Assembly: GCA_044892505.1 (NCBI GenBank)
Contig: CM097882.1
Coordinates: 283,978,896 to 284,024,000, forward strand
Direction of reading: 5' to 3'
DNA from: Schmidtea nova
Lineage: Eukaryota
Length of the DNA: 45,105 nt
Each line of letters opens with the position of its first letter. Position 1 is the first letter of the stretch. Of the stretch, positions 17,836 to 45,105 are shown one piece after another. The position numbers were made by a program, and so were the translations under genes. Below the pieces are notes generated by a model that was not told where the DNA came from, ran no database searches, and saw only the letters and a list, made by a program, of their open reading frames with translations.

Positions 17836-18431
17836 CTGACCACTACAGTCCAATGTTTCAATCACATCAAAATTCTATGCCTCCTCAATCAACGATTAAT
17901 CAACAGCCTGACCACTTTGTAATCGTAGCTTCGCAATACCAATCATATTCTGAGCAACAATTGCCCATTAATACTACCAATAACGGACCTATACAACGGA
18001 AAGTTCACCAAATAAGTTATCAACATTGAGCAGCATCAAATGTTAATGCACAAATGCAATTCCAACATCAACATCAAGTATCTCAACCGATTAGTCCTAG
18101 GAGTACAGATGCTTCTAATCACCAAAGCGACATGTCAGAAATTAACTATACCACAGCAGTGTCAATTTCAAGCAACCAACCAAATTATATTATGTTTCCC
18201 GATGCAAACCACATGGCAATATGTATTATTTATTATATTTATATTGAAAAAATTTTATTTATATTTATCATAATTTTATATATATTATTTAATAAATTTA
18301 TTTATAAAATTACCCTTCCCGTTTTCTCTATTCCGCCTTTCTTTCGCCCTTTAACTCCAAAACACACTCATAATCCTAACCTAGATCCAATACACGATAA
18401 CGATTCTTTCGCCAAAACCACACCGATACTA

Positions 18432-19511: not shown

Positions 19512-20163
19512 TAATCAAGTCATCGGATATTTTTGGACGCTACGATAACTCCCCGCCAGTGAATTGCCTTTCTCACAGCCAACCATGTCCAACGCATACA
19601 CGATTAACTCCGTCAGCTAGCATCATATCAGAAACAACCACTACTCTCTCCACAGTACTATTTTCTCACACAACACCACCACCAATACCAATACAGGAAC
19701 CAACACTAGAACAAGAACCAACCAGCTCACCTCGCACAACACTTGCAAGAGCACCAACAAAAACTTCACCCAGCACACCGCACACAGCACCATCCGCATC
19801 ACTACCAGCTGCAGCATCCATAATACCATCAAAAACACCACTAACAATACCACAAGCATCGCTAACCTTTTCCGACAACGAAACCCACACAGACTACACA
19901 CACATTCTACCACAGTCGCCACAAACCGCATTTCCGTCATTGCTCTCACCAACACTTATCGTCACGATGGAAACATACTCGTCCTTTTCAATACTACCTA
20001 CCGCTTTCATCGCAGACACATCTTGCTCATCATCCGCCCTAGCCGCGAAAGGTACACACAAACTGCTCTCCGGTATAAGAACAATTGAGTTTCGTCCTCC
20101 AAGTATTTTTTACTCCGACCCTTGAATACCGTTTTGTCTTTTCCCATACGCTTGGCGTACTTC

Positions 20164-20171
20164 GGCGGGGA
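20164..20171 (+). promoter_or_regulatory. Short polypurine tract
   Basis: GGCGGGGA just upstream of the 3' LTR. Confidence 0.6.
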
Positions 20172-20175
20172 CTAT

Positions 20176-20602
20176 TGTAGTGCATCCGTCATATATATCT
20201 TTATATTGTAATATATTAAAAATATTCATATATATTAAATTAAACATATGCTTATATATAAAAAACAAGTGAGTTGTTTAAATATCCAAATAAAACCAGC
20301 AAAATTTAAAATTAGAAGAAAAAAGCACTTGAAGCATTTCAAAGCAGAATTTAAAATTAGAGGAAAAAAAAGCACTTGCAGCATTTCAAAGTAGAAGAAA
20401 ATAAAGCACTTTAAGAAAATGTATTCAGATATAGATTTACAACCTGCTACTGTTGTAGCGCTACAAAAACTCAGATGTTTTCTCACGGATACTAAAAAGA
20501 ACAAGCAATGTTACTTAAAAATAAATATTTTATTAGTGTTTATTTTGTATTTTATCTTTTATCCGATTAAGACAAATACAGAACGGGGTACAGAAATACA
20601 GA
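20176..20602 (+). repeat. 3' LTR (last ~8-10 bp missing)
   Basis: Aligns to the 5' LTR with roughly 15 differences by eye; diverges before the terminal GCCCCACA, so no TSD can be checked. Confidence 0.9.
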
Positions 20603-23019: not shown

Positions 23020-24090
23020 CAAAAGTTATTATCGGGGTTTTGTAGAGAAATAAATTACAAGTTGGAAAAGGTAAAAATATGTTGAAAAATAGTTTGAGAT
23101 TTTGAAAAAAAAAATCAAAGTGCAGTTGGCACAAAATTTTAAAATCAATATTCTAATAAAAGTTTAAATAGAATCTTGTAGAGAATTAAATTGTGAATAG
23201 AACGAGCTCTATAATTGTTGAAAATAATATCCAACAGTTGCAGAAATCTTGAATTGTACCGTGTCAAAATAAAAATCACTTATATACCTAAATTAAGATA
23301 TGGTATTATAGAGAATAAGTTTTCAAAATAATTGATGTAATAAAATGTTAAAAAATTATATGAGTATATGAAAAAGATGAAGTGCACAGTGTGCAAAATA
23401 TTAATATTATAACAAACTTCTATATATCAACTTGTAGAGGATAATTTTTCAAATAAAATTAACTATAAAATACTTGATAATAAGTGCAAAAACTTATAAA
23501 ATATTTGAAATTTACAATGTACCAAAAATTAAAAATTGATATTATTACAAAAGTTTTAAATCATCTTGTAAAGAATACTTTTTCTGATAGATTGAGATAT
23601 AAATCTCTTGAAAGTAATTTTTAGCACCTATGAAAAAGTTGTAGTGCAGTGAGTGCCAAATTTAAAAATCAATATTATATCAAAACTTTATATATTGTTG
23701 AGAATATTTTCTTTCTAATAGATTGAGCTATAAATCTCTTGATAATAAGTGCAAAAACTTACAGAAAAGTTGAAGTGTACAGAGTGCCAAAAATACAAAT
23801 CAATATTATTATAAAAATTTATATACCGTCTCGTAGAGAAAAGTTTTTTTAAGAATGAGTTATAAATCTCTTGAACATAATTTCGAGCACTCATGTAAGA
23901 GTTGAAGTGCAGTGGATGCAAAATAAAAAATTCTTGTTTTAACAAAATTTCTAGATTGGCAGGAAGAGCACTTGATTTCAAACATGTGACGTAAAAATTA
24001 ACTCTATAAGTTGTTGCAGTTGCTGGGAAAAATAAAGTATTTGAATAACAATATTTTACAAAATATTTTTGGTGCAATTGATGAGGCACT
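23020..24090. repeat. Degenerate ~130-bp tandem array (~8 units)
   Basis: CTTGTAGAGAA..TATAAATCTCTTGA..GTGCA motifs recur near 23040, 23176, 23297, 23432, 23564, 23696 and 23832. Confidence 0.65.
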
Positions 24091-25170: not shown

Positions 25171-25948
25171 TAATATAATTATAATGAAATAACCAATAGT
25201 TACTAAAAAATAAAATGTTACAAATTTTAAAATTAATTTATATATACAAGTTTATGTAATTTTACTTTAATTCTTTAATTACATACATTGATTTAAATCA
25301 TTTAAATTAATAGTTAAAGAAAGTAGTTATAATTAACTATATTTGACATTAAAAAAACTCTAGTGAAAATTTAATACTATTAAATGAAACATTAACACTA
25401 TTAAATGCAAAGGTCATACTAATAAATGAGAAACTCTATATGCAGTTATTATAAATGCATAAGTTTTATTGGTAGCATAAAATTTCATAAATTATGATTA
25501 GCAAATAATTACTTTTGTCGTTTGTTAGATTTTTAATTGTGTAAAAACTGATTAAATGAATAATTAGAATATTTTACTTTAGAAAAACGAATATTCTCAA
25601 CAAATTGTTTTTCAAGGTTAGATTTCGGTTATTAGATTAATATTGGAAATCATATTACTAGGCTTTTTTGCTTTAGATACCTAAAGACTTCAAGAAATAT
25701 AAATAAATAATTTATTGAATATTTATAATTTCCCTTTTCAAATTTTCTTTTCCCGCCTTAATACATAAACATATCTAAAAATCTAACAAATTCACGACAT
25801 AATAAGTACTAATGTTTATTATTCAAATTAAAATGCTTTATTCATATTTATTGCTGATTAATAGAACATTCGTTTTTATTTTGCGTTAAAATATGATGAG
25901 AGAATGTACTTTGACTGTCATAGAAGTCATATTTATGTACCTAAGACT

Positions 25949-30659: not shown

Positions 30660-31570
30660 CATGAACATTACAAATAATATTAAGAAAATTATTTTTTAAA
30701 AATATGAAACAGACAAAACAGTAAAATAAATATCTAATAAATATCTAATATACCTTAAGTCTGCCACGGTCTCGGAAATAATACAAAAAGTATAAAGAAA
30801 CAGGAACAATAGAAACTTAAATACACAGCTATAATAGGAGAAAGATTTCCAATGCTGAATCAGATGAGAAAATAAAGGAAAGAATTGAAGAAGACATTTT
30901 TGCTACATTAAATGAAATCAAGACGATTCTAGCCACTAGTCATAACACAAACGTATCCACATCAACACTACACAGCACAATTAAATTATTCGAATATAGT
31001 TTTGAACGTATCACTTAATACTGGCGAGGCGTAACGTATAAGATCATATAGAAATGTATAAGAAATGGACCAAACTAAATTAGTTTTTACAGATGAAATG
31101 GGTGTGAATTGTTCAATGAGAAGAAGATTTGGGAGATCATTACTAGGTACAGCACCACGTAAAACAGTAACATCCATAGGAAGTAAAAATATATCAATAT
31201 CTGCAGCTATAACAAAGGATGAACTACTATATTTTAAAACAAATGTTGGTGCATTTAATTCTGACTCTTTTTCACTAATTATAAACGATTTGATGGATAA
31301 ATTAAGATTCAAGAATCTGACAGGGATGACGATTATTTGTGACAATGTACTTTTTCGTAAGTCCGAATCAATACAAAACCTTATTCGGGAAAATGAACAT
31401 ACATTACTTTTCTTGCCTCCGTACAGTCCTCAACTGAATCCTATAGAACAGATATTTGGCGTTTGGAAAGAAAAAATAAGATCAAGAAATTGTTAGAATC
31501 AGGATTCTTTGTTTGGAGCCATTGAAACAACTTCAAATCTAATAACAAGGGATCATTGCATCTCCTTTTA
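30660..31570 (+). pseudogene. Tc1/IS630-like DD34E transposase (degenerate 5' half, intact DDE core 31065-31496)
   Basis: LVFTDEMG..IICDN..FLPPYSPQLNPIE; 34 residues between the second D and E. Confidence 0.9.
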
Positions 31571-32197
31571 TTGATTTTCGTTAATAATAGCGATTACAAA
31601 ACAGCGATTACAAAGATAGCGAGTAGTTAAAAATAGCGACCACAAAACAAAGATTTAATATAAATTTTTCAATTTAGATAAATAGTATATAATTGACAAA
31701 GTTATATCACATAAACTGTATTTCAATGAAAAATTCATTCGAAAATCAAAAATGATATGATTTTATAAAACTATAATCAAAATTTATTAATTAAAAATTA
31801 AAAAATAACAATATAAAATAATAATAATAATAATGATAATAATAGTGTTGGGCCCACCAATTGGTCTAAAAAGACAAAAATATTGTACTAATTCAAACAA
31901 TAAATACAAATAATAACCACAAAAACATTCGAAAAACCTAAATTAAAAAATCAAAATAAAATAATAAATAATAATTACTAAATTTCCAGCAAAGGAAGAA
32001 AATCAAATTGACACGGGAACGAGCAGTATGGGGATCTGAAATAAGAAAATTACAAATAAAATCAAATAAAAGTACAATTAATTGGTTAATTACTTGAAAA
32101 AATCAGGACCACCCAGCGAGAAATCTGAACCGGAAATTTAAAATGGTTTATATTAAAATAAAATAACAAAATTACTTTGATGGACGGCCTGATCCTG

Positions 32198-32232
32198 ATT
32201 GGTCAATCTGACCAACTGGATCAGTATAAATA
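32198..32232 (+). promoter_or_regulatory. Candidate LTR promoter: inverted CCAAT plus TATA box
   Basis: ATTGG at 32198-32202; TATAAATA at 32225-32232. Confidence 0.5.
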
Positions 32233-33150
32233 CCGATCCAAAAATCATACAGATACCCTAAAAACTTAGCTACCGAACTGATCTATAACAGTCAGTTACA
32301 TCAACTTTGATACGACAAATATTGTGTAAAATTTTGGAAGCGCTGCATCTTGGATTTAAAGAGTAAATTTTGTTGTATTGTATTTGAACTAATTTTATGA
32401 TATGTTTTACATGATTCCCATTCATTTCATTTCATTTAATATAATTTATTACTATTAATTGCTCTATTTTCTTATGCTATTATTTTATGATATGATAAAT
32501 ATACTTCCTCAGTAGCTCACGCTGCGAGGGAGTAAGCCGTAAATGTGGGATTTCACCGTTCCACAAGATGGTGAGCAGAGTTTCTATTGGTATTTTTTTA
32601 TTTAATTTAATTTTTTATCAGAGGTTTAACTTTACAGTAAAGTTGTACAGGGACAAGAACACGGGTAAAATTAGTAGACAGTGTTTAACATTAGTTAATT
32701 AACGTTCGATCAGACAGGAGAGAATAAACTACAGTATCAATTATCATGTCAACTAAATCGATTTCGCATATGCACACGATTTTTTCGAATCCACATAGCT
32801 GATCGAAATAATGTCCGGACACACCGAGACGATTTCGACATTTCAACGATAGTTTTAATTAAGATATAAATAACAACATAATCAGATTGACACTACTGAT
32901 TGAATAACTAAAACCGTAACCTGATCGCTGTAAATAGCGCAGGTGATAATATGTAAATTTTTAATAAACGTATCCCGATCGCTGTATATAGCGACGGTGT
33001 TAATTGAATAGCTTAGAAAATTTTTTTTTTATTCCTCCTTTTCATATTTTTTTTGTTTTGTTGATCAACGAGAGGAGCACATTTCATCAGGTCTCACCAA
33101 AATTTGCGGATTCGTCACAGTAAATTTTATTAGCATTATTATTTTCTCAG

Positions 33151-33651
33151 ATGAAATCAACGATACTGGATGAATTTCTAACAACCCAACGTCGTGCGGC
33201 ACGGGACGAAAATCCTCTAATCCGGACGCAACAGAAGAAATTGAAGTCGCTTCCACAGGAACTTCTAAGAACGCTAAATGCGTTGATGTACAAGTGGAGA
33301 CGGGAACTGGGAAAAAAATGTCCATTTTCGATTTGGACCGGTGGATTAGATACCATCATATATCGAGGAGGCCCCGGATGGAAAAGTTCAGACGAAAGAG
33401 ACCCCGAAACGACAGCTCGATTCATCATAGTGTTGACGGACATCGCAGGCAACCCAACGACCGTAATCCACTGGGGATATGTCTCACCGCTCAAGTTGCT
33501 TCGATTTGGTTTGATTCCGAACCACCTACTGAAAACGGACCATGGACGCCCCAAACTAAACTGTTCAATGGCTCACATCCGACGAGATCCAGTCAATCAC
33601 GGGTTGCATATTACCCCCGTTCACGGCCTCAAGCGAAGCGTTTTTCACTAA
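33151..33651 (+). CDS. Intact 166-aa hypothetical accessory protein inside the probable LTR
   Basis: ATG-to-stop ORF, GC-richer than its flanks; no recognisable motif. Confidence 0.55.
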   Translation: MKSTILDEFLTTQRRAARDENPLIRTQQKKLKSLPQELLRTLNALMYKWRRELGKKCPFSIWTGGLDTIIYRGGPGWKSSDERDPETTARFIIVLTDIAGNPTTVIHWGYVSPLKLLRFGLIPNHLLKTDHGRPKLNCSMAHIRRDPVNHGLHITPVHGLKRSVFH

Positions 33652-33803
33652 AAATTCTATTCACATTACTATGAACTAAATGTTTTCTATAAATTAAATG
33701 GTGTTGATCTGTGTTTTGTTTGTTATTAGTTAAATTTCTATCTATTTATTTAATTATACAATCTTTTACACTTGACGGATAATATTAGTCGTTGGTAACA
33801 TAA

Positions 33804-34427
33804 TTGCTGCATCATAAAATAGGTTTGTTATTTAGTATGACAGAAACCAGCCAACAGCGGGAATTGGATAAGGCGTGGAGAATCCGCCGAGCATTAGAAA
33901 AGGAGTTAAATCAAGAGAAAGCATTTCGAGCCAAGGCAGAAGCTCAGATCCAGCATTTACGGACCAGCTGGTTCGCCCCAGCTCGCATGAAGGAGCAGAT
34001 AAGTCGAACGGATAGGGCTCAAAAGACAGCTGACGACTATCGTACCGAATGGGAAGCAACAAAAATTGAGTTGCGCCGATGTCTCCATTCGGTGACGACT
34101 TCTTTTATCGAGTCCGAATTGAGATCACAAATCCGACCTATCACCTACCAGAAATGGGTAGGAGAACAGAAAGTGGCCTGCTCGGTCAGTACGGACACCG
34201 ATGGGCTCGAGACAACAACAGTGCAGAGTCGGGTGGAAACCACCACTGCATCAAACCCCGTCGGAAAAATGAACAAGCGAAAACGAATCGGCTCCAAACG
34301 CCGTCGCCAAAGAAAGCTGTTTTCTCAACAGTTGCAGACACAAGTGACCACTATGGCCGAAATGTCGGAAGCCGAGTGGTTATCCGAGATATTCCCTCCT
34401 GAAGGAATCTTCAAAGAATTTCTGTAG
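33804..34427 (+). CDS. Intact accessory protein: coiled coil, basic NLS, acidic-hydrophobic C-terminus (likely ATG at 33837)
   Basis: RELDKAWRIRRALEKELNQEKAFRAKAEAQIQHL; KRKRIGSKRRRQRK; EMSEAEWLSEIF. Confidence 0.6.
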   Translation: MLHHKIGLLFSMTETSQQRELDKAWRIRRALEKELNQEKAFRAKAEAQIQHLRTSWFAPARMKEQISRTDRAQKTADDYRTEWEATKIELRRCLHSVTTSFIESELRSQIRPITYQKWVGEQKVACSVSTDTDGLETTTVQSRVETTTASNPVGKMNKRKRIGSKRRRQRKLFSQQLQTQVTTMAEMSEAEWLSEIFPPEGIFKEFL

Positions 34428-34917
34428 CAGATAGAAACATAATATGATGTCAGATTTTGGAGTTAATTAAATCTTTGCTCGTTTTGTTTTGTTGTTGTTA
34501 TTTCCTATGTATATTCTTCGATTACATAATTCATATAATTAAATTTACCTTACCCGTCACACAACGAAAGGAGTAGCGTTAAAGAATTAGAATATCATCG
34601 AATTCGTAGTTTCGTTTTGCTTGTTTTTTTTTGTTTTTATGATAAATATAGAACATCACACACACAATGGAACAATAATTGCGTAAGTCCTTCTACGGCC
34701 GCGTGAACCCGTAAACATAAAGGGGGAGTAGTCCTAGCAATAGTGCTCACGTGCCCCTCATTGTTTAACCACCCTGCGCATCCCCAACTTGGTTATCAAG
34801 GGAAATAATCAAGGGCGCTCGAGTGTAACTTACGACTATTTATGCATGATCATGGATGGGAGATCCCTAGCAATCATTAGAATTTTTACCAAACCGTCCA
34901 TGAACCCAGCATAAATT

Positions 34918-34935
34918 TGGGGGCTCAGCCGGGAC
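34918..34935 (+). promoter_or_regulatory. Primer binding site, tRNA-Pro type
   Basis: TGGGGGCTCAGCCGGGAC versus canonical tRNA-Pro PBS TGGGGGCTCGTCCGGGAT (15/18). Confidence 0.85.
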
Positions 34936-35248
34936 TAGCTTCGTTTTATCGGAAAAATGTGAATGCAAAATCTGCAGAGAAGTTTAAAGTGCTCGTGTCG
35001 TGTGAATAAATTCAATAAAAACAGAGAGTTTATAATTAAATCTAAATTCTGAACAAAAATAAACCACAAACACAACAGTAATAAAAGTAAAGTTATAAAA
35101 ATCAAATGCATGTATAAATAATTTGTCGGGACGACAATTTTAGGAAACACGGGGAGAGTAAATAAATATTAAAGATACAAAACGAAACATATTACTACTT
35201 TAAATAAATATTAAAAGACACAAAACGAGACATATTACTACTTTAAAA

Positions 35249-35752
35249 ATGATAAAAACAACAAAGTTAAAACGATTATTTATTCAGCAAATGGAGGAAA
35301 AACTGAAAGAAATCGAAGAATTTCTTAACACAGAAAACGAAACATTAGCAACAATTGGCAAGAAAATAAACCGATTTAGAGAAATTGAATTTCAAGAACC
35401 CACAACACAGACCGAGGAAACAGATGAATTAATAAAGATAACAGAAAGAACAAGTAAAATCGACATAAAAACCCGCTACAAATGGTACAGAGCACGACTA
35501 GAGAATGCGGAGCTAAACATTAGATGCAGACAAATAGAACAACAATTAACCCCAACATACAATCGATGGAGGGCGCAAGGGGTAGAAGCAGCGAAAAAAT
35601 ACCGACAGTGCTATATATGTGAAAACAACGAGATACAAATTATGTTTTTACCTTGCGGACATTTCCGTTTTTGTAAGATCTGTGCCAGCAAGTGTGACCG
35701 GTGTCCGATGTGCAACTTTACTGTGAATGAAAAAATTGTAGTTTATTTGTAA
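35249..35752 (+). CDS. IAP-type C-terminal RING (C3HC4) E3 ligase with N-terminal coiled coil, no BIR
   Basis: CYICENNEIQIMFLPCGHFRFCKICASKCDRCPMCNFTVNEKIVVYL* versus XIAP [46 protein letters not shown] overlaps the stop (35751-35756). Confidence 0.9.
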   Translation: MIKTTKLKRLFIQQMEEKLKEIEEFLNTENETLATIGKKINRFREIEFQEPTTQTEETDELIKITERTSKIDIKTRYKWYRARLENAELNIRCRQIEQQLTPTYNRWRAQGVEAAKKYRQCYICENNEIQIMFLPCGHFRFCKICASKCDRCPMCNFTVNEKIVVYL

Positions 35753-36219
35753 TAAATGTTTAGAGTTGATTAGTAAAATGTCGAATGGTGAATCATGGGA
35801 ACAATCATTGTATTTAAATAATTTTTGAGCTACTACAAAGTAGTCCGGTAAGAATCCACTGGGAGGCACCGATTGATCAACCCATTCAGAGCATATAGAA
35901 AGGGGCCCATCGCAAATGTTGGAAAGTTTTTGTGATGTGATTGATCACCACATCCCGCATTAATAGACCAACGCGATCTTTTTGTATATTTTGGTTGGGG
36001 AGAGAGATAGGGAAATCTTGATGGAGTAAGGCGCGCATAGAAAAATTAATAAAATTTGAAGCAGACTGATCAGAAAATAGTTACGATAAAATAGAAAATG
36101 AATGACGGTATAAAAAGGTGCATAATCAGCTCGCATAGAAGTAGTTATAACTCAGCTGAGAAATTTAAGTCGCTAGCGAAGTTAAGAATTGTGATTAACC
36201 GGTTAAGTAAAGTTATAAA

Positions 36220-36312
36220 GTTATTAGAGTTGTCCCTTGAAACAAAGGGTTATTAGCGGTTTGTCCCTTGAAACAAAGGGTTATTAGCGGTTTGTCCCTT
36301 GAAACAAAGGGT
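36220..36312 (+). repeat. 31-bp tandem repeat, ~3 copies
   Basis: TGTCCCTTGAAACAAAGGGTTATTAGCGGTT at 36231, 36262 and 36293. Confidence 0.95.
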
Positions 36313-36313
36313 T

Positions 36314-36582
36314 GAGGCCAATGAGCCATATTGAATGACCTAGCTAGGCGTTATGGAGAGATATTAAATTGAGGCCAATAGAGCCATGCGAGAGATTAAA
36401 TTGAGGCCAATAGAGCCATATGAGAGATTAAATTGAGGCCAATAGAACCATATGAGAGATTAAATTGAGGCCAATAGAGCCATATGAGAGATTAAATTGA
36501 GGCCAATAGAGCCATATGAGATATTAATTTAAGGCCAATAGAGCCATGTGAGATATTAAAATTGAGGCCAAAAAGAGCCATA
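36314..36582 (+). repeat. 32-bp tandem repeat, 7 copies plus a partial, nearly all with GGCCAAT
   Basis: (G/A)AGGCCAA at 36371, 36403, 36435, 36467, 36499, 36531 and 36564 (last copy CCAAA). Confidence 0.95.
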
Positions 36583-37190
36583 GAGAATTATAGAGATATC
36601 CGGATAATTAGTAACAGAGGGAATATAGGCCATAGTTGTGATCGGCAACGAGATTAAGAATAGTGCGCACTAGTAGTTAAGAAATGCGAGTAAAGCTGAT
36701 TATGCAACCTGAAGTAAAGCATGCAAGGAGAATAATAAAAAATTAGAGCTGACCGGAGAAACCGGCAGACTAGGTAAAACGATAGCTAGCAATGAGTAAT
36801 GAATAGAGATGATAAAATAATGATAAACGAGTCAGAAAGACTCAGGGAATTAGAGCGCTCAAGCGACCAATAATTGGGAAATTGTGGGAAAAGTAATTGA
36901 TTTGTAAAATATAGATAATTATTACGACATAAATAGATAATTGTGACCAGTCTATAGATAATTTAAATAGACTAAAAATAAAGGGAAATCTGGGGATTGG
37001 GAAATAATGAAAACCCGGTAATAATTAATCCCGAAAGAAAGGGAATAAAAGCGCGACGATAACAATAATGTATCGTTGAGGACCTTTGTATTTTAGATAT
37101 ACAAATCAATCAAATCAATCAATCAAGCAAGAAGAATCAGAACACGATAAGAAATAGGACAGGAAAATTGAGTATACAAAAGTAATCCCG

Positions 37191-38570
37191 TTGAGAACAG
37201 GAGTAAAGAGTGTCGTAATAAAGCCAACAGAAAAGAAAGTCGGCAGTGAGAGTAACAAAAAAGACAAAACTAGTACTACCACAAAATCAGCAAAAAAGCA
37301 GAAAGCCGGCAAAGATAACAACAAAAACCCACAAGGGAGTAAAGCGAGGAAGATAATAAGAGACAAATCGATTATCGAAAACGATAAATTGTCAGTAGTA
37401 AGCAACAGCTCAAGTAACAAAGAAAACCAAGCGGAACCCAAGGAGAACCAAACAAGTGAAATAGAAATCGACGAAACTAACAACGATAATATCGAAGAAG
37501 TAGAAAACGAGGTAGAACCAGAGGTAGAAATCAACGAGAGTGATAACGAAAGTATAATATCGGATAACGAAGTAATAAGAGAAACAGAAAGCGACTCAAG
37601 CTCGAGTGAAACAGAAGACGAACATAACAACGAACTAGAAACAAGAGGAAACGAAAGTAAAATAACTCAAGACAGCGGAATTGAAATGGGTGAACCAAGA
37701 GAAGAAATAAAGGATAAATTTTCAGGAGAACCATTTAACGGAGATGCGAGTAAATTAGAAACTTTTCTAAAGGAATTTGGCATATTCGTGGAGGTATGCA
37801 AGTGGAAAGCTGAAACAACAGTAAGCAGAATTCAGTTATATTTGAAAGATAGTGCATTGGACCTATATTTGGAAGCGAAAAATGGTACCAATCCACCTGC
37901 AAATTGGACAGCGATAAAGGATTTTTTCCAACAAACCTTTGGAATAAATAAAGTGCTAAGCGAGGCATTCATAGAATTTTCAATGAGGAAACAGAAGATG
38001 AATGAGTCTAACGCGGTATACGCGAGCGAACTGAAAAAATTAGCAAAATCGGTATTCAAGGATGGGGGTCCAATAAACGAGGAACTAATGGCAGCCATCT
38101 TCATAGGAGGATTAAGAAGACCCGACATAAGAGCGCAAGTGGGATGCCAAGGATGCAAAACCATAGATCAAGCGTTAGAAACAGCTAACCGATTCGAATT
38201 GCACATGATAGGAAGCGAGGGCAGAATTTACTTAGCCATGGACACAGCGCAAACCGAACAAGAGGTAAATCTCAACAATCACATCCCAAATTCGCAACAG
38301 TTAAACCGACCACCCCCTCAACGAAGGAATGAAGGAAATAAAGTGCAGAACTTTGGAAACCAAAACAATTACAACCCTCAAGGACAAACAAAACAATGTA
38401 AAACATGTGGAAAGTTGGGACACTGGCAGCAAGAATGCTATCAAAATTTGAATTGCGGAAAATGTGGGGTCAAAGGACATTCGGAGAGTAGATGTTCTAC
38501 GATAACCTGTTTTAATAGCGGACGACCTGGTCACTACTCAAGAAATTGTGGACAAAAAAGTAATCAGTGA
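37191..38570 (+). CDS. gag: Polyprotein segment 1: acidic N-terminus, Ty3/Gypsy Gag capsid, three CCHC knuckles
   Basis: PFNGDASKLETFL..LYLKDSA..W..IKDFF..KQKMNESNAVY..FIGGL; CKTCGKLGHWQQEC, CGKCGVKGHSESRC, CFNSGRPGHYSRNC (38397-38549); true start codon unresolved. Confidence 0.92.
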   Translation: MRTGVKSVVIKPTEKKVGSESNKKDKTSTTTKSAKKQKAGKDNNKNPQGSKARKIIRDKSIIENDKLSVVSNSSSNKENQAEPKENQTSEIEIDETNNDNIEEVENEVEPEVEINESDNESIISDNEVIRETESDSSSSETEDEHNNELETRGNESKITQDSGIEMGEPREEIKDKFSGEPFNGDASKLETFLKEFGIFVEVCKWKAETTVSRIQLYLKDSALDLYLEAKNGTNPPANWTAIKDFFQQTFGINKVLSEAFIEFSMRKQKMNESNAVYASELKKLAKSVFKDGGPINEELMAAIFIGGLRRPDIRAQVGCQGCKTIDQALETANRFELHMIGSEGRIYLAMDTAQTEQEVNLNNHIPNSQQLNRPPPQRRNEGNKVQNFGNQNNYNPQGQTKQCKTCGKLGHWQQECYQNLNCGKCGVKGHSESRCSTITCFNSGRPGHYSRNCGQKSNQ

Positions 38571-39860
38571 GGAAACTGGCAGAATAATGGAAACCGGCAA
38601 AATTACGGAAATCAAACAAATACCGTAAACCGACAAGATTATGGAAACCAACAAGTCCATAATAACCATAATCAGAACAAAACTACCACCAAAGAAATAC
38701 ATTTGATGCAAGAAGTCCAAAGGTTGACGGAACTTATAAACAACACGACGAGAGGAAATCCACAAACCAATCCACAGCAAATTAGTATGATGAGAAAAAT
38801 AGAAAGCGAAAACGAACGATTGAATCGAGAAAGTCAAGCACTACACGCTCAGGAATGGGCAAGAATACAAAGAGAAGATGAACAAAAACAGCAAGAAAGA
38901 GAGCGACAACCTCTAAGAATTAACATGTTGAGAGCAACAAATCAAACAGATACCCACGAGAAAGAAACCACATTAGAAATAAATTCGAATCCAACCGACA
39001 ATGGAAGTCGAAAAGGAGTAATACAAGACGATAAGGAAGCAGAAAAAGAAATAGAAAAGGAAGTAGAAACTGAGATAAACCAGGAAGAGAGGAGGAAAAT
39101 TTGGAAAAAAGGAATGATGGTAATCATGCCCAACAACCATATGTTTCGATTCCAATATAACACAAAAGAAGAGGTGGCAATACTGTTTAACAAAGTAAAC
39201 CAAATGGTTCCAGGAGTAACAAAACTGCCCAGAGAAGCGTTCCTACAAATAGACGGTGCGCCAGAAGTAAAGTTGAAATTAACGGATATATGGGAAAACA
39301 TGGGAGTAGTAGAAACAAAAAGAAACGTGATGATTATCAAAGAAATAGAACCAGAGAAAATCCCAGCACCAGTGCGTCACGAAACCCGAATCAGTCGAAT
39401 ATTTAAAGGAAAAATGATAAGAAGACGTTTGAAAGAGATAGACGAGTTGGAGAAGAAAATGAGAAAAGTCGAAGTAATAGAGGACAAGAGTGAACCAACA
39501 CCAGAGATTGACAAAAACGAACCAGAACGAACGGAGAATATACAGGGGGAAACGAACCAAATAGCACACATTAATATGTTAAGAAATACCACCAGAGAGT
39601 TTTCCGATGAGGAAGGAGATAGCGATATCAGTAGCCTAGCAGGAGACATATTAAACGAACCCGAAGACGAAAATAAAGAGAGAGAAGTAATAACGACCTC
39701 AGAACCTACACAGATAAAAGTAGATGAAATCCAGAAATTACTAGATAACTCGCTAGACGTAATATATAACGAAGAGTTCATGGACAAGAAACAATACCGG
39801 AAATTCATGAAAGCATTATTACAAATGAACTACAAAGAATGGTTACAAGACCGGAAGTAG
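38571..39860 (+). CDS. Polyprotein segment 2 (in frame with Gag after TGA): N/Q-rich, coiled coil, possible Ubl, acidic
   Basis: 38703-37191 is divisible by 3 and the frame is open from 38571; beta-grasp-like MVIMPNNHMFRFQYNTKEEVAILFNKV..LTDIWENMGV (39111-39338). Confidence 0.75.
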   Translation, partial: GNWQNNGNRQNYGNQTNTVNRQDYGNQQVHNNHNQNKTTTKEIHLMQEVQRLTELINNTTRGNPQTNPQQISMMRKIESENERLNRESQALHAQEWARIQREDEQKQQERERQPLRINMLRATNQTDTHEKETTLEINSNPTDNGSRKGVIQDDKEAEKEIEKEVETEINQEERRKIWKKGMMVIMPNNHMFRFQYNTKEEVAILFNKVNQMVPGVTKLPREAFLQIDGAPEVKLKLTDIWENMGVVETKRNVMIIKEIEPEKIPAPVRHETRISRIFKGKMIRRRLKEIDELEKKMRKVEVIEDKSEPTPEIDKNEPERTENIQGETNQIAHINMLRNTTREFSDEEGDSDISSLAGDILNEPEDENKEREVITTSEPTQIKVDEIQKLLDNSLDVIYNEEFMDKKQYRKFMKALLQMNYKEWLQDRK

Positions 39861-42040
39861 ACATGTTAAATCGATACGTAGGGAAATTAATAGAGGAACC
39901 ACTCCTCAATTACACCATCTCAATAATAATAAATACATCTACACCAAGAATCTGGATCAAAACTCCATTTACAGACGATATCTACAGATGGGTAGAGGAC
40001 AGGCTAGGTAGTTCATATAAAAACAAATTCATCTATTCGCAGAATAGACTCGTAAAGAAAAGAACGCATTTAGTAGAAACAGGTATATGGCCAGGAGAAG
40101 TAACCCTGTTATCAATATGTGATGAAAAGGAAGGAGAGAACCTACAAGAAGTTGCAAAGGAAGCAAACACGTGCTTTGAAAGGAGAATAAAACCACGGTT
40201 AGAATACGAGAAAGGACGAGTCTTACGAAAGAATCTAAATTCCCTGATAGAACAAATCATACCACAAGTCAAAAAACATAGAAAGGAGTTAATGCGAAGC
40301 GAATACGAGAAGCTGAAACGATGCATCGAGTGCATACGTGACACAAGTCACACGAGATGGTCACAGATCTCACACGACAAATTAATCGCAAAAATGGGAA
40401 AAACAATGTTCAGACAAGGGAAAATAACGGATCTAAAAATTTCAGTAGAGTTACCTAATGAGGACACCAAAGAAATTGAAGTGGTAGCAGATTGCACCAT
40501 AAGAGAATTAGTAAAGATCATAAACGAGACACTAGTGCAGACAGAACCAGAAGACGAATGGGAAGACGACATAATCATGAAATATAACGAACATGTATTA
40601 TGGGATCACGATGAGAGACGACTATATAAAATCGGTATATGGGATAATCACCAAACCATCCACGTTATCAGAATGGACGATACACCCAGAGAAACTGCTA
40701 AAGATGAGAAAAAAGAACGGGAACGACAAAAAGAAGTTATACACAAATTACAACAAATAGCAGAAATTTATCGAAATTGGCGGATTTGGCCGGAGTGGGA
40801 AAATGCATTAGAAGAACTCAATCTCAACAGACGAATACGAACATCCGTAGAAAAACAATGGAACGAGCAAGGAAAATGTTGGGAACCAAAAGAAGGGGAA
40901 TATAAAGAAGAATATGAAAGAGGAATGGAAGGTGACTGCGAACCAGAAATGGGAAGGGTTTGCATGGTGACAAGAAAAACTACGCCAATAGATCTAGATG
41001 GACCAGAAACAGCGGCTATATGGTTAGAAAAGGAAAAGCAAAAAACGGAAGAATTAGTCGAAATATTAAAAACTAATGCGCACGGTAAGAGAAAAGTAAT
41101 AAAAGGTCTCGCAGATTTTTTCGTGGTTAATGGAGAAGATGTAACATGCTTGCGTAAAGTAGCAAAAGCAATCGCAGAATATAAAAGAGTCAACGAGTGG
41201 TGTCCGGAACAACTAGACCACGTAATTAGGAAATGGAGAAATCAAGAATACTCGCAAGAAATTCCACAAAAAGTACATTTAAGAATAATATATCCAAACA
41301 AGGATAAGGAAGAATTTTGGGTAGGAATAGCAGAAAAAATTTGAGATATTAAAAAGAAATTGAGATACGAACCACCATTCCATTTACAACACCAAGGACG
41401 ATCACTAGATAACAGTTTGGAAATCTGAATAACGCCAGCACAACTAGATCTCATGAATACCTTGACAGTAGAAGCAATAGCAGGTCAACCATTGAAACGT
41501 AAAGAAGAAAACCATAAACCACACGGAAGTATAAGTACGCCGAGCCCGATGAAATCAGTATTAACGCAAGGGACAAGTTCAAAACGATCTGAGACAACAC
41601 CCAGAGGGAATAGAGAAAGGACTCCACCACAACCATATGACGTGGACGAAATATTAACAGACAGCGACGACATGATAGAAGAGCTAACCAAATTAACAAA
41701 GGAAAAAGACGACAACATTTTCGAAAGAATACAAGAACTACCTACGACAATACAAGTAACCAACACCGGAGAAGCAGAAGTCGAAGATGAAATAATAATA
41801 GAAGAAGTAAACGATTTGACAGAAGACGAAACGAGAGGAGCGAATGTACAATTAACACAAGAAATGGAAAGATGGTTGGAAGAAAGAGCCAACGAACCAA
41901 GAGATGTCACGGAAGAAACCGGACGGGCAACAAGGTTTGTGGAAACAGGTACAGGAATGGATAGACGACCTCGAGGTAGACCCAAGACAGATCCAGCGAA
42001 TGTAGTCATCAGAAATAAGGATGAAAAGAGACAAGATTAA
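39839..42040 (+). CDS. Polyprotein segment 3: ubiquitin-like domains plus acidic linker (two internal TGA)
   Basis: Ubl 40433-40675 LKISVELPNEDTKEIEV..TIRELVKII..IMKYNEHVL..LYKIGI..QTIHVI; weaker Ubls at 39911-40120 and 41273-41455; the frame continues across TGA 41342 and 41426 into ORF 41453. Confidence 0.75.
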
Positions 42041-42520
42041 TGGGAATTATGTTTAAAGAAATTAAATAAAATCGCGGAGATAAAAGAAAAAGAGACAACA
42101 CCAATATGTCAAGGGAAGGAATGGATATCGAAAACAATAATGGAAATATTGGCAATAATTGATCCGGAATTGAGAAAATACTGGCGGATAACTGAGATAA
42201 GCGAAAAGGCGAAGTCATTACACAGCGCAATCGCACCCATCTTACCGGAATTCATAAAAGAGAAAACTAAGTCAAATCATTTAGACTGGCAAGGAACCAC
42301 TACGTTAATAAAGAAACTGACAGAAGGAGCGGAAACAGATAACAAATACGTAATAGCCATTGCATACACTATTTACAACCTACTAACACTGAGTAGAGGT
42401 CGACCAAAACCCACTGCGTTGGAAAGACACATAAAAAATACCGCAAAAATTATAGCCAGAGAAATAGAACCATACATCATTAACAAAGGAGGATGGGAAA
42501 CATTTATCAAAACTAACCAG
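42041..42520 (+). CDS. Polyprotein segment 4: Bcl-2-like domain
   Basis: IKNTAKIIAREIEPYIINKGGWETFIK aligns with Bcl-xL alpha6-BH2 ([28 protein letters not shown]); helical pattern upstream; BH1 NWGR degenerate (DNKY). Confidence 0.7.
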
Positions 42521-42616
42521 AAGAAAACGCAAGCCAAGAACATGAAAAAGAAATTCGAAGAGATATTGGGAGAATTGGAAAAAGAACAAGCAGGAACAGG
42601 AAACGCGAAGTCGTCA

Positions 42617-44545
42617 ATGAACCTGAGTTCAATTATAATGATGATGTTGATATGGATGATTAGCACCGATAGCGCAACAGCGTTCGAAGTATTTGATTGC
42701 GATCAGATGGCATTAGGCGAAAAATATTCATTGCGAGGTACAGAGCAATGTAAGGATGCAACTCCAACGGAACTAAAGACAATACAAAAGAAACAACTCT
42801 ACCATGTGTACCAGGAAGCGGAATTGATAAAAACCATGGTTAGAGAGTGTAAAATTTATAAAACAAGATTCGCTTTCTATTGTGGACACCGTCATTATTC
42901 GGCAATCGTAATGCCAGGAACCGAAAGAGAATCAGTAATGCTGCAAGGAGAAGATTGCGAAAAATTGTTCAGACACGGGGAAATAGAAACAAGAGATAAG
43001 ATAAGATTGAAAGGGAAAGTTGGAGCGATATTACAACAAACCTTATACGTAGCAGCAGCTATCACAGGAGGAGAAGGCTATTGTCAAGGAGAAACCTACC
43101 CTATATTCGGAAAACCAGCAACGAACTTAGTGGTGATTGACACCTACACAGTAGAACTTAAAGCATACGAAGGATTCTTTGACCCAGCGACAGGAGAAAT
43201 GAAAACCCTGCCGATATGTAAGATAGACGCGAATACCTGCCAAACAGGCCTGTCAACTTTAACATACCAAACGCGAGGAAATGAATGTCAATTACAATTT
43301 TTAAAGCAAGCAGAATTCGATGAAATACAAGGAAAGACTTTCCAAGAGGAAGAGGAAGACGAAGTAGCAAGAGGAAAGATTCTCAAAGAAACAGTACAGG
43401 TAGAAGGAAAGATCGAAGCAACACAGGAAAAACAAATCAGAATGAGAAATACCCCAACGGTACTCATCTCCTCGGATGAAGATATAGGAATGAGATTCGT
43501 AAAAGGTAAAACAGCCTTGAAATGCGGAGTATCAATGTTAGAAACCAACTATCCCGGTATCTTCGTATCAAGACAAGATGTACCTAACGCAAAACGTCAA
43601 GTAAACACGAACGATGTTAAACTACACCTCTACGTAAACAATAAAATGGATTTCCTATTTCACAGAGGACAAGCTTCATTACAAAAGGTGTATTACGACC
43701 TTATTAACAACGATTGTATATTGAATAGAGAGATACTGAAAACAAAGTTAGCAGTGGCCATCACCAATCCAGACAGTGCAATGCCACTATTGCCACTAAG
43801 AGAAGGTCATTTTGGAAGAGTAGTTGGTGAAGTTATGTACGTATACATATGCAAAAAGACTAACGCAAAAGTTGCAACGGCGACAAAATTACAACCAGGG
43901 CAATGTACAAACGAATTAGAAATAGAATACAAAGGAAAAGTTAGATACGTACAGCCAGTAAAAAGAATTATAAATCCAGTAAGCTTCGAACCAAACCCTT
44001 TCAATTGCAGCAACGCATACGGACCATTATATCAAAAACCGGATGGAAATTGGGTTATGTTTCCCGCAAGAACGGAAGTACCAGCACCAAGAGAATTCGA
44101 ACTAATGCGATTATCGAAAAGACGAAAATTCAAAGACGTCGATGTAAGCAATATGGGATTTTATAGCGCGAAAGATTTAGAAGCAGCAAGACAAAATATA
44201 CTGTTCCCAGCAAGGAGAGAAGCGGTACTATCCAGTATTGTAACTATAACAGGAGGAACAAATTACCAAGGTGGACCCAATTATGAACTACTTTTATCAC
44301 CAGCTCATTTTAAGAAAGCAACTGAGAATATGATGAAAGCGATGTGGGGAAGGTTTTTGATTTTCGGACAAATGATGGCAGGAATACTTGGTGTCATACT
44401 AATAATACAAATAATACGGGTGGTCATAACACAAATGCTCGCGTGTTTTTATATTTACAAAAGAGAAAAGAAAGTCAACTGGAAATTAGTGTTAGGATTC
44501 TTACCATTTCTGGCTAAAACCATGGTGTTACAGATGAAGAAATAG
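42617..44545 (+). CDS. env: Polyprotein segment 5: internal signal peptide plus chuvirus-like (class III, gB-like) envelope glycoprotein
   Basis: IIMMMLIWMISTDSATA|FEVFDC; LYYDL..C.LNREIL..LA..NPD..GH..VVGEV.Y...C; QP..RII; GFYSAKDL; FPARREAVL; W..FLIFG..AGILGVILII TM; all follow chuviral G patterns. Confidence 0.85.
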   Translation: MNLSSIIMMMLIWMISTDSATAFEVFDCDQMALGEKYSLRGTEQCKDATPTELKTIQKKQLYHVYQEAELIKTMVRECKIYKTRFAFYCGHRHYSAIVMPGTERESVMLQGEDCEKLFRHGEIETRDKIRLKGKVGAILQQTLYVAAAITGGEGYCQGETYPIFGKPATNLVVIDTYTVELKAYEGFFDPATGEMKTLPICKIDANTCQTGLSTLTYQTRGNECQLQFLKQAEFDEIQGKTFQEEEEDEVARGKILKETVQVEGKIEATQEKQIRMRNTPTVLISSDEDIGMRFVKGKTALKCGVSMLETNYPGIFVSRQDVPNAKRQVNTNDVKLHLYVNNKMDFLFHRGQASLQKVYYDLINNDCILNREILKTKLAVAITNPDSAMPLLPLREGHFGRVVGEVMYVYICKKTNAKVATATKLQPGQCTNELEIEYKGKVRYVQPVKRIINPVSFEPNPFNCSNAYGPLYQKPDGNWVMFPARTEVPAPREFELMRLSKRRKFKDVDVSNMGFYSAKDLEAARQNILFPARREAVLSSIVTITGGTNYQGGPNYELLLSPAHFKKATENMMKAMWGRFLIFGQMMAGILGVILIIQIIRVVITQMLACFYIYKREKKVNWKLVLGFLPFLAKTMVLQMKK

Positions 44546-45105
44546 GACGCAAATTTAAAAAGATAATGAATGACGAACAAGCAAGACAACAGCTCAAGAG
44601 AGAAAGAAAAGGTTTATGGGAGAGGATGAAAGGATATAAAACCCAAAATGATTCGAGCGACGACGATGATGACGATGATGACTATAAAGGAGGACAAGTG
44701 TATAAGAACCAAGCACCACAATACATCGAAAAGAACCCAGCTGACGCATGGAAATGTTACGCACCCCCACCAACAATGTATCAAGAACCACTACAAGGAG
44801 GAAGAACGACCACGATGCAAATGATGCCAATGACGAATGTATACCCCATGATACCAGAAGATTATAAAATGAGAAGATGCAGAAGTGTGGATCCACAAGG
44901 AGATACGCATACGATCGCCGTGATGTCATCAAACACAGGTCCAGTACTAACCACGACAATAGAAATTAACGGAAGAGAAATCGAAGCAATAATCGACACT
45001 GGAGCAAATATTTCCGCCATCGACATCAAATGGATACCACAAGAGCAAAGACGGGATATAGAAAGGACGAACGTCCACGTAATTGCATGTAGCAAAGAAA
45101 TTGTA
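44518..45105 (+). CDS. pol: Polyprotein segment 6 (-1 frame): cytoplasmic tail and start of retropepsin; runs off the window
   Basis: Open frame absent from the ORF track (no stop): NHGVTDEEIGRK...GPVLTTTIEINGREIEAIIDTGANISAID; DTG at 44995-45003. Confidence 0.9.

What the first reader, a model, noticed from the sequence alone, without database searches (positions are those of the whole stretch)
31846..45105. Giant enveloped Gypsy retroelement with a single Gag-Ubl-Bcl2-Env-Protease polyprotein and anti-apoptosis cargo
Seen: ORFs 37191, 38703 / 39839, 41453, 42140 / 44518 join into one >2600-aa frame with only 4 stops (38568, 41342, 41426, 42038) and 2 single-base shifts (~39840, ~44518). The order is Gag-3xCCHC, up to 4 Ubl, Bcl-2-like, signal peptide, chuvirus-like Env, tail, protease. 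An IAP-type RING gene lies between the PBS and gag, and two more ORFs lie in a ~3 kb LTR. Established: env in errantiviruses and retroviruses is a separate ORF 3' of pol; Bcl-2 and IAP mimics are typical of large DNA viruses. Inference: a virus-like retroelement that blocks host cell death at two nodes (mitochondrial Bcl-2 axis and IAP/ubiquitin axis) while producing enveloped particles. From memory, giant Gypsy 'Burro' elements with multi-kb LTRs are described in the planarian Schmidtea mediterranea and have been linked to anti-apoptotic cargo. That comparison must be made before claiming novelty.
Basis: partly seen in the sequence, partly recalled or inferred. Interest (0 to 1): 0.95.

Follow-up and report, generated by a model that had tools for sequence, protein, structure and literature searches.

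The report
Decayed Burro-type giant planarian retroelement
The region is the front half of a broken copy of a giant, virus-like LTR retroelement whose single long gene carries Gag, a Bcl-2-like domain, an envelope glycoprotein and a protease. This layout is striking, but it was already published for the 'Burro' elements of planarian flatworms.

Summary
The observation mostly holds. From 37191 to the window's end, one + strand reading path of about 2,640 codons is interrupted by only 4 in-frame stops and 2 frame changes; the other frames carry 72-173 stops.

Supported parts:
- Gag with zinc knuckles, two canonical and one variant.
- A Bcl-2 fold (AlphaFold2 plus Foldseek).
- An internal signal peptide.
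- A Monjiviricetes-type fusion glycoprotein (Pfam PF24664, E 1e-70).
- A retroviral protease, cut off by the window's end.
- An intact upstream ORF with an IAP-type RING but no BIR domain.

Weakly supported:
- 'Up to 4 Ubl': one candidate has sub-threshold support and the rest have none.
- The 3-kb LTR and the PBS, which are inferred from one end only.

Two distant relatives also carry the Bcl-2-like part, signal peptide and Env in one frame. A third relative runs unbroken across one of the window's frame changes. So this copy is decayed, not natively split.

The layout is already published for Burro/GYPSM1 elements of Schmidtea mediterranea and a relative (PMC6431247). That description includes env in frame between gag and pol, and the idea of apoptosis/ubiquitin cargo. 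Gag-env-pol order in flatworms is also published (PMC13524379).

RT/IN, the 3' LTR and the host species could not be checked. Verdict: real, but already known.

The parts
31846..34911 (+). Candidate 5' LTR (3,066 bp), inferred
   Evidence: Starts with TG directly after an (AAT)n microsatellite (31804-31844) and ends with CA. The terminal hexamers form a 5-of-6 inverted pair. GC rises from 0.26 to 0.32-0.43 at this point. No second copy lies in the window, so the extent is unverified.
33151..33651 (+). ORF of 166 aa inside the LTR candidate, function unknown
   Evidence: No Pfam or NCBIfam hit. Open stretches of this size are rare in shuffles. Third-position composition differs from the element's main frame.
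33804..34427 (+). ORF of 207 aa inside the LTR candidate, function unknown
   Evidence: No family hit. Longer than the longest open stretch in all 300 shuffles.
34918..34935 (+). Primer-binding-site-like 18-mer starting with TGG, 6 nt after the LTR candidate
   Evidence: Read. Its complement has the form of a tRNA 3' end (T-stem strand, acceptor strand, discriminator, CCA). No tRNA gene in the window to match it against.
35159..35247 (+). 43-nt tandem repeat (2.1 copies) just 5' of the RING ORF
35249..35752 (+). Intact accessory ORF (167 aa): coiled-coil-like N-terminal part plus a C-terminal IAP-type RING
   Evidence: Pfam zf-C3HC4_3 E 3.7e-11. Best PDB relatives are cIAP2 at 3.4e-10, XIAP at about 1e-9, cIAP1 and ML-IAP. 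No BIR domain in this ORF or in neighbouring ORFs.
36230..36590 (+). Leader tandem repeats: 31-nt unit x2.7 (36230-36313) and 32-nt unit x7.3 (36358-36590)
   Evidence: Tandem repeats are drawn in the published Burro maps (figure legend in PMC6431247).
37191..45105 (+). Giant gag-to-protease polyprotein gene, broken (4 in-frame stops, 2 frameshifts) and cut off by the window's end
   Evidence: Counts. A-rich coding strand with AT skew 0.32-0.45 and GC 0.36-0.40 throughout. Domains as listed below.
37191..38549 (+). Gag region, ending in three zinc knuckles (38397-38549)
   Evidence: Pfam zf-CCHC E 6e-6. Retroviral nucleocapsid chains at E 0.016-0.05. Two canonical knuckles and one with Ser at the second Cys position. 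No Retrotrans_gag hit was found.
40421..40699 (+). Best ubiquitin-like (beta-grasp) candidate; weak support only
   Evidence: Pfam Ubiquitin_4 E 0.073 over profile positions 2-78 of 89, and SAP18 E 0.073. Strand-strand-helix-strand-strand order in a low-confidence model. Conserved in relative P0001. Candidates at 39105-39359 and 39899-40150 gave no hit.
42101..42520 (+). Bcl-2-like helical domain
   Evidence: AlphaFold2 model with pLDDT 67 and pTM 0.63. All top 50 Foldseek PDB matches are Bcl-xL, BFL1/A1, Mcl-1, BAK or Bcl-2, with probability 1.0 and target TM 0.5-0.72. The viral library's top matches are viral Bcl-2 homologues. Pfam Bcl-2 is E 0.13 here and E 9.6e-4 in relative P0002. A G-G-W motif is invariant in the window, P0002 and P0004.
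42620..42682 (+). Internal signal-peptide-like segment between the Bcl-2-like domain and Env
   Evidence: Hydrophobic core at 42623-42667. A basic residue precedes it and small residues sit at -3/-1 before a conserved Cys-containing start of the ectodomain. The same arrangement is seen in P0002 and P0004.
42683..44431 (+). Envelope fusion glycoprotein: ectodomain plus membrane anchor (44369-44431)
   Evidence: Pfam PF24664 Monjiviricetes_fusion E 9.6e-71. 14 Cys in the ectodomain. 35-40% identity to P0002-P0004. No solved relative by sequence.
44953..45105 (+). Retroviral-type aspartic protease, N-terminal part only (window ends)
   Evidence: Pfam RVP E 1.2e-5, matching profile positions 7-50 of 101. 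D-T-G at 44995.

Best explanation
The region holds the 5' LTR, the leader and the first roughly 2,640 codons of a decayed copy of a Burro-type giant LTR retroelement (endogenous retrovirus-like), of the kind described in planarian flatworms.

Shown here:
- A gag-to-protease reading path that carries, in order: Gag with zinc knuckles, poorly characterised accessory segments, a Bcl-2-fold domain, an internal signal peptide, a Monjiviricetes-type fusion glycoprotein with a membrane anchor, a cytoplasmic tail and a protease.
- A separate intact RING ORF in the leader.
- In divergent relatives, the Bcl-2-like part, signal peptide and Env are one uninterrupted frame.

Inferred:
- In intact relatives the whole path is one polyprotein.
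- The internal signal peptide inserts into the ER membrane, so Gag and the accessory domains stay in the cytosol, the Env ectodomain enters the lumen, and the tail, protease and polymerase return to the cytosol.
- Host signal peptidase and the element's protease then separate the parts.
- The Bcl-2-like domain and the IAP-type RING would act on host cell-death and ubiquitin pathways.

This particular copy cannot make that polyprotein as it stands, because of its 4 stops and 2 frameshifts.
For: - Domain calls.
- Break counts against background.
- Uniform composition from Gag to the protease, with no flanking repeats around env.
- P0002 and P0004 (35-40% identical Env) carry the Bcl-2-like extension, signal peptide and Env in one frame.
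- P0001 matches the end of one window piece (its residues 29-190, E 5e-6) and the start of the next (201-546, E 2e-43) in one unbroken chain.
- The overlap of the last two pieces holds no canonical slippery heptamer.
- Published description of the same layout in Burro/GYPSM1 and a D. tigrina relative, including env in frame between gag and pol, upstream accessory ORFs, leader tandem repeats and multi-kb LTRs: PMC6431247.
Against: - The host species is not known, and identity look-ups for the window's ORFs were blank.
- RT, RNase H, IN, the 3' LTR and the target-site duplication lie outside the window, so 'LTR retroelement of the Gypsy group' rests on Gag, the protease and the literature.
- No Burro reference sequence could be compared.
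- The window element lacks the MATH/TRAF domain listed for Burro-1. The relative P0001 has that domain at the corresponding spot.
- No BIR or ankyrin domain is seen in the visible half.
- The Ubl call is sub-threshold.
- All functional statements are homology-based inference.
Confidence: 0.8

Rival explanations
1. The element is a separate, undescribed lineage of flatworm gag-env-pol retroelements. It would be related to Burro but not one of Burro-1 to -4, and possibly from another species. It lacks MATH and carries a RING accessory ORF.
For: - The only relatives found are distant: 32% identity for P0001 and 35-40% for P0002-P0004.
- A MATH domain is present in P0001 and absent at the matching spot in the window.
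- A RING ORF in the leader is not listed in the published Burro domain lists read here.
- Gag-env-pol elements form several host-linked clades (PMC13524379).
Against: - Every visible module except the RING is in the published Burro description.
- That description already notes that accessory domains move between the polyprotein and upstream ORFs, and that a relative lacks MATH in ORF1.
- The databases searched hold almost no planarian proteins, so distant hits say little about how close the nearest real relative is.
Confidence: 0.13
2. The interruptions are partly native expression signals: the stop after the zinc knuckles is a gag terminator that is read through, and the frame change before the protease is a programmed ribosomal frameshift, as in retroviruses. 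On this view the element encodes separate Gag, accessory/Env and Pro-Pol products, not one polyprotein.
For: One stop falls right after the nucleocapsid knuckles, and one frame change falls shortly before the protease. Retroviruses place such signals at these positions (established knowledge of retroviral gag-pro-pol expression).
Against: - The overlap before the protease holds no canonical slippery heptamer.
- No Rfam frameshift or readthrough element is found.
- The other frame change lies inside a stretch that relative P0001 reads without a break.
- The published Burro-1 ORF1 is a single 4,873-aa frame through PR, RT and IN.
Confidence: 0.05
3. The env block is a nested insertion or an endogenised RNA-virus gene that merely lies inside an unrelated retroelement.
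For: The Env belongs to a family otherwise known from negative-strand RNA viruses (Pfam PF24664).
Against: - Env continues in the same uninterrupted frame as the Bcl-2-like domain here and in two distant relatives.
- Composition and AT skew do not change across its borders.
- No direct or inverted repeats flank it.
Confidence: 0.02

Closest known systems
[quoted passage not shown] 2018; annotated in PMC6431247)
   Same: - Multi-kb LTR, leader tandem repeats and a giant first ORF.
- Gag with three zinc knuckles.
- A ubiquitin/SUMO-like region.
- A BCL2-like domain directly before an in-frame env.
- Then PR.
- An apoptosis/ubiquitin-related accessory content.
   Different: - No MATH/TRAF domain at the matching spot.
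- No BIR or ankyrin in the visible half.
- A separate RING ORF in the leader.
- This copy is interrupted 6 times and cut by the window's end.
- Sequence identity to the reference entries could not be measured.
Burro-like element of Dugesia (Girardia) tigrina (PMC6431247)
   Same: ORF1 lacks MATH. An accessory domain is encoded by an ORF upstream of gag. The layout is Gag, BCL2, env, PR.
   Different: There the upstream ORF carries MATH; here it carries a RING. That element has two zinc knuckles; this one has two canonical plus one variant.
Gag-env-pol 'errantiviruses' of Platyhelminthes, Nematoda and Bryozoa (PMC13524379)
   Same: env lies between gag and pol. The Env is of the class III (gB-like) kind, to which that paper also likens chuvirus-type glycoproteins.
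   Different: Those elements are described as having separate ORFs and ordinary size. No Bcl-2-like domain fused to the Env signal peptide is reported in the passages read.
Mosquito BEL/Pao elements with a captured chuvirus-like glycoprotein ('Anakin'; PMC7642597)
   Same: An LTR retroelement carrying a glycoprotein of the Jingchuvirales/Mononegavirales kind.
   Different: A different retroelement superfamily, with env as a separate gene, no Bcl-2 or RING cargo, and an arthropod host.
Viral Bcl-2 homologues of herpes-, pox-, asfar- and iridoviruses
   Same: The same fold, carried by a mobile or viral genome.
   Different: Those are free-standing proteins of large DNA viruses. Here the domain is a segment of a retroelement polyprotein. 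Cellular Bcl-xL matches the model slightly better than the viral homologues do.
IAP proteins (cIAP1/2, XIAP, ML-IAP)
   Same: The RING of the leader ORF is closest to IAP RINGs.
   Different: There is no BIR domain, which is the defining part of an IAP. The N-terminal part looks like a coiled coil.

Membership tests
Burro-type giant LTR retroelements of planarians | Host is a dugesiid planarian | not testable with these tools
   The organism is not given. Identity look-ups were blank. A GC content of 0.21-0.30 in the flanks is merely compatible.
Burro-type giant LTR retroelements of planarians | Multi-kb LTRs and a total length above 30 kb | tested here: inconclusive
   A 3,066-bp 5' LTR candidate is inferred from one end only. 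13.3 kb of the element is visible and it has not ended at the window's edge.
Burro-type giant LTR retroelements of planarians | Gag with two or three CCHC zinc knuckles at the start of the giant ORF | tested here: met
   (two canonical knuckles, one variant). The Retrotrans_gag motif named in the paper was not detected by Pfam.
Burro-type giant LTR retroelements of planarians | Ubiquitin/SUMO-like domain before BCL2 | tested here: inconclusive
   One candidate scores E 0.07 for two beta-grasp families; the others score nothing. The stretch that corresponds by position to the published SUMO-like domain is interrupted in this copy and is too fragmented to search by pieces.
Burro-type giant LTR retroelements of planarians | BCL2-like domain | tested here: met
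   Fold match. The relative P0002 reaches Pfam Bcl-2 at E 9.6e-4.
Burro-type giant LTR retroelements of planarians | env in frame between BCL2 and PR | tested here: met
   The Bcl-2-like domain, signal peptide and Env are one uninterrupted frame here and in P0002 and P0004. PR follows after a tail, in another frame in this copy.
Burro-type giant LTR retroelements of planarians | PR-dUTPase-RT-RNase H-IN after env | not testable with these tools
   Only the first part of PR lies inside the window. The contig could not be extended.
Burro-type giant LTR retroelements of planarians | MATH_TRAF_C, BIR and ankyrin accessory domains (listed for Burro-1; not universal, since a relative lacks MATH in ORF1) | tested here: not met
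   None is found in any ORF of 31846-45105. MATH is present in relative P0001.
Burro-type giant LTR retroelements of planarians | Sequence identity to the Burro/GYPSM1 reference entries | not testable with these tools
   No reference sequence is reachable. The primer table of PMC8532177 is not held, and the Nature paper is not held.
Ty3/Gypsy (Metaviridae) | RT and IN phylogeny, with domain order PR-RT-RH-IN | not testable with these tools
   RT and IN lie beyond the window's end.
Bcl-2 family | Bcl-2 helical bundle with BH1/BH2-type motifs | tested here: met
   The fold is met. By sequence, only the C-terminal half aligns, below the Pfam cut-off. Pro- or anti-death activity was not tested.
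IAP (inhibitor of apoptosis) proteins | At least one BIR domain | tested here: not met
   No BIR in the RING ORF or elsewhere in the region. Only the RING is of IAP type.
Monjiviricetes fusion glycoprotein (PF24664) | Score above Pfam's gathering cut-off | tested here: met
   239 bits against a cut-off of 27.
Chuvirus (Jingchuvirales) glycoprotein specifically | Closest named relatives are chuvirus glycoproteins | tested here: inconclusive
   The only hits were three unnamed proteins that themselves carry the Bcl-2-like extension. Two further searches were blank. There is no solved relative.

The most novel reading that the evidence does not exclude
The hydrophobic segment between the Bcl-2-like domain and Env may serve two purposes. 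It would be the signal peptide that sends Env into the ER. After signal-peptidase cleavage, it would also be the C-terminal membrane anchor of the Gag-to-Bcl-2 product, with the same orientation as the tail anchor of cellular Bcl-2 proteins. That would make this a flavivirus-style, signal-peptidase-processed polyprotein in a retroelement. The arrangement is kept in three lineages whose Env is only 35-40% identical. I found no statement of this in the papers read.
Probability: 0.3. Interest if true: 0.5.

Novelty: already known. Interest (0 to 1): 0.25.

Why it matters
The type matters. It is a retroelement that carries its envelope gene inside the gag-pol polyprotein, together with cell-death and ubiquitin modules, which blurs the line between transposon and virus. 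It is also abundant in a regeneration model animal. That point was made in print in 2018-2019, and this window adds only one more decayed and truncated copy.

Two things here may be of some use:
- The Bcl-2-like part, signal peptide and Env are fused in distant relatives too. This argues that the fusion is old and under constraint.
- The accessory set varies between lineages: MATH is absent here and a RING ORF sits in the leader.

Tried and rejected
- Extending the contig or finding the source: identity look-ups with three of the window's own ORFs found nothing.
- Protein searches: the Env query and the Env alignment gave blanks because the candidate lists were swamped. Only the search restricted to the ectodomain worked.
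- The exhaustive search with the Ubl-candidate piece found a single relative among 1.84 billion representatives, so no deep alignment could be built.
- The AlphaFold2 model of that piece was unusable (pLDDT 34) and its fold search was not significant.
- A profile of that piece plus P0001 against solved structures found only TRAF MATH domains, from P0001's extra segment.
- hhalign among the Ubl candidates was not significant.
- No other copy or fragment of the element lies in the window.
- Rfam found nothing in the window, and there are no tRNA genes.
- Burro primers or reference sequences from papers are not held.
- Rejected: env as a nested insertion, and the RING ORF as an IAP.

Full report
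**What is there**

The window is AT-rich (GC 0.21-0.30 in most of it). Composition steps up at 31846. There a TG-led sequence starts directly after an (AAT)n microsatellite.

From 37191 to the window's end, the + strand has a strongly A-rich coding bias (AT skew 0.32-0.45). It reads as six stop-free pieces lying in three frames. Counted along that path there are 4 internal in-frame stops and 2 frame changes in about 2,640 codons. The other five frames of the same stretch hold 72-173 stops. I do not list where the breaks are.

**Domains, each piece searched apart**

- **Gag piece.** It ends in zinc knuckles: Pfam zf-CCHC E 6e-6, and retroviral nucleocapsid chains at E 0.016-0.05. Two knuckles are canonical and one has Ser at the second Cys position.
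- **Bcl-2/Env piece.**
  - It holds a fusion glycoprotein of the Monjiviricetes family: PF24664, E 9.6e-71, 239 bits against a cut-off of 27.
  - A short hydrophobic signal-peptide-like stretch (42623-42667) precedes the glycoprotein, and a membrane anchor (44369-44431) follows it.
  - Ahead of the signal peptide in the same uninterrupted frame lies an all-helical domain.
  - By sequence the helical domain only grazes Bcl-2: Pfam E 0.13 over the second half of the profile, and Bcl-xL chains at E about 1.2.
  - An AlphaFold2 model built with two relatives (pLDDT 67, pTM 0.63) matches only Bcl-2-family structures in the top 50 of the PDB library. These are Bcl-xL, BFL1/A1, Mcl-1, BAK and Bcl-2, with probability 1.0 and target-normalised TM 0.5-0.72.
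  - In the viral library the same model matches viral Bcl-2 homologues.
  - I take the Bcl-2 fold as supported.
- **Last piece.** It carries a retroviral protease start (RVP E 1.2e-5, D-T-G at 44995) and is cut by the window's end.
- **Leader.** An intact 167-aa ORF (35249-35752) has a zf-C3HC4_3 RING (E 3.7e-11). Its best solved relatives are the RINGs of cIAP2, XIAP, cIAP1 and ML-IAP. There is no BIR domain anywhere in the region, so it is an IAP-type RING protein and not an IAP.

**What did not hold up**

- **'Up to 4 Ubl'.**
  - One candidate (40421-40699) scores E 0.07 for both Ubiquitin_4 (nearly the full profile) and SAP18.
  - That candidate shows a strand-strand-helix-strand-strand order, but in a model too poor to use (pLDDT 34).
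  - Its fold search gave ubiquitin-like folds only at probabilities of 0.1-0.4.
  - Two other candidates gave nothing, and the candidates are not significantly alike.
  - The stretch that corresponds by position to the SUMO-like domain published for Burro-1 is interrupted in this copy. It is too fragmented to search piece by piece, so I left that test out.
- **LTR and PBS.**
  - The LTR (31846-34911; TG...CA with a 5-of-6 inverted terminal hexamer) and the TGG-led tRNA-like 18-mer at 34918 are plausible.
  - They rest on one end only.
  - No second LTR copy lies in the window.
- **LTR ORFs.**
  - The two ORFs are longer than chance: 0 of 300 shuffles reach the longer one, and 1-3 of 300 reach the second-longest open stretch, which contains the other ORF.
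  - They have no relatives.
  - Their codon-position make-up differs from the element's main frame.
  - They remain unexplained.

**Relatives**

- **Search with the Ubl-candidate piece.** An exhaustive search found one relative among 1.84 billion representatives: P0001, 882 aa.
- **P0001 is colinear with the window.**
  - The end of the preceding window piece matches P0001 residues 29-190 (E 5e-6).
  - The Ubl-candidate piece matches residues 201-546 (E 2e-43) and 784-871 (E 5e-9).
  - So a relative reads straight through where the window changes frame. That break is decay, not design.
- **P0001 has an extra domain.** Between residues 547 and 783 it has a TRAF-type MATH domain, where the window has about 30 residues. 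This is a lineage difference in cargo.
- **Search with the Env ectodomain.** It found P0002, P0003 and P0004, at 35-40% identity.
- **The fusion is shared.**
  - P0002 and P0004 carry, in frame ahead of their own signal peptides, an extension that aligns with the window's Bcl-2-like domain. The alignment includes an invariant G-G-W.
  - P0002's extension reaches Pfam Bcl-2 at E 9.6e-4.
  - The Bcl-2/signal-peptide/Env fusion is therefore a shared, conserved feature of a diverse group.
  - Together with uniform composition and the absence of flanking repeats, this rules out a nested insertion of env.
- **Protease junction.** The overlap of the last two pieces holds no canonical slippery heptamer, and Rfam finds nothing. 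A programmed frameshift before the protease is therefore unlikely, though not excluded.

**How it most likely works**

- **Shown:** the order of the modules and their fusion in relatives.
- **Inferred topology and processing:**
  - Intact relatives make one polyprotein.
  - The internal signal peptide inserts into the ER membrane. Gag, the accessory segments and the Bcl-2-like domain stay cytosolic, the Env ectodomain enters the lumen, and the anchor returns the tail, protease and polymerase to the cytosol.
  - Signal peptidase and the element's protease then cut the parts apart.
- **Inferred cargo function:** the Bcl-2-like domain and the RING protein act on host cell-death and ubiquitin pathways.
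- **Possible twist:** the signal peptide could stay on the Bcl-2-like product as a tail-anchor-like membrane segment. This is my own inference and is untested.
- **This copy:** with 6 interruptions it cannot make the polyprotein as it stands.

**Comparison with what is known**

The review PMC6431247 describes Burro-1/GYPSM1 of Schmidtea mediterranea and a Dugesia tigrina relative as follows:
- Internal regions up to 25 kb and more than 30 kb with LTRs, present in thousands of copies.
- A 4,873-aa (or 5,140-aa) ORF1 with Gag and three (or two) CCHC knuckles.
- MATH_TRAF_C, a SUMO-like domain and BCL-2.
- Then PR, dUTPase, RT, RH and IN.
- Tandem repeats.
- The suggestion that the element interferes with apoptosis and ubiquitination.

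PMC8532177 shows that BURRO1 is expressed and controlled by PIWI. PMC13524379 reports gag-env-pol order with gB-type Env in Platyhelminthes, Nematoda and Bryozoa, and likens chuvirus-type glycoproteins to gB.

Membership in Burro is well supported by architecture. It is not proven:
- The host, RT/IN and identity to reference entries could not be tested.
- MATH, BIR and ankyrin are not in the visible half.

If the source is another planarian or a separate lineage, this would at most be a new member of a known kind.

- **No fetching of relatives' contigs.** I did not look up or fetch the contigs that encode P0002-P0004, and I did not scan the viral or metagenome collections with the Env. I cannot tell whether that would be fetching a virus of animals. 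Only their protein sequences, as returned by the search, were compared.
- **Early look-ups.** Before settling on that reading of the bar, I made three identity look-ups with the window's own ORFs. They returned nothing.
- Such bounds coincide with breaks. I left those records as they stand and do not repeat them here.

**Verdict**

This is a real and correctly read feature. It is a decayed, truncated copy of a known kind of element, so interest is low because the kind is already described.

Noticed in passing
window 17387-20602: A small LTR-bounded element. Direct repeats of about 430 bp (17387-17814 and 20176-20602) are 94-98% identical. Inner ORFs lie at 18054-19070 (DUF7041, E 1.3e-3) and 19472-20125. 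The interior is GC-rich (up to 0.46) with a strong negative GC skew.
   Followed up: partly
window 4823-5794 (-): A pogo/Tc5-type transposase ORF (Pfam DDE_1, E 1.1e-44).
   Followed up: partly
window 31065-31496 (+): A Tc1/mariner-type transposase ORF fragment (Pfam DDE_3, E 5.5e-25) lying 350 bp 5' of the big element. The element may have landed in or beside another transposon.
   Followed up: partly
window 9592-9772: A near-perfect palindrome: 90-nt arms, 98% complementary, 1 nt between them.
   Followed up: no
window 10485-12866 (-): A GC-richer island (0.36-0.41) with ORFs of 378 and 178 aa (11154-12290 and 12330-12866) that hit no Pfam family.
   Followed up: partly
window 15584-15883, 25370-25466 and 23436-23957: Tandem arrays: a 97-nt unit with three copies plus a fourth copy 9.6 kb away, and a unit of about 131 nt with three copies.
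   Followed up: no
window 33151-34427: The two ORFs inside the LTR candidate are longer than chance but differ in codon-position make-up from the element's main frame. Third-position A is 0.32 in these ORFs against 0.45-0.51 in the main frame. They have no relatives. A captured or nested sequence inside the LTR is not excluded.
   Followed up: partly
window about 41966-41995: An AT-hook-like basic motif (R-G-R-P core) sits in the acidic linker ahead of the Bcl-2-like domain. It was read in the translation and not tested.
   Followed up: no
P0001 residues 547-783 against window about 40880-40975: The relative carries a TRAF3-like MATH domain (PDB E 3e-22) where the window element has only about 30 residues. 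The accessory cargo differs between lineages.
   Followed up: yes
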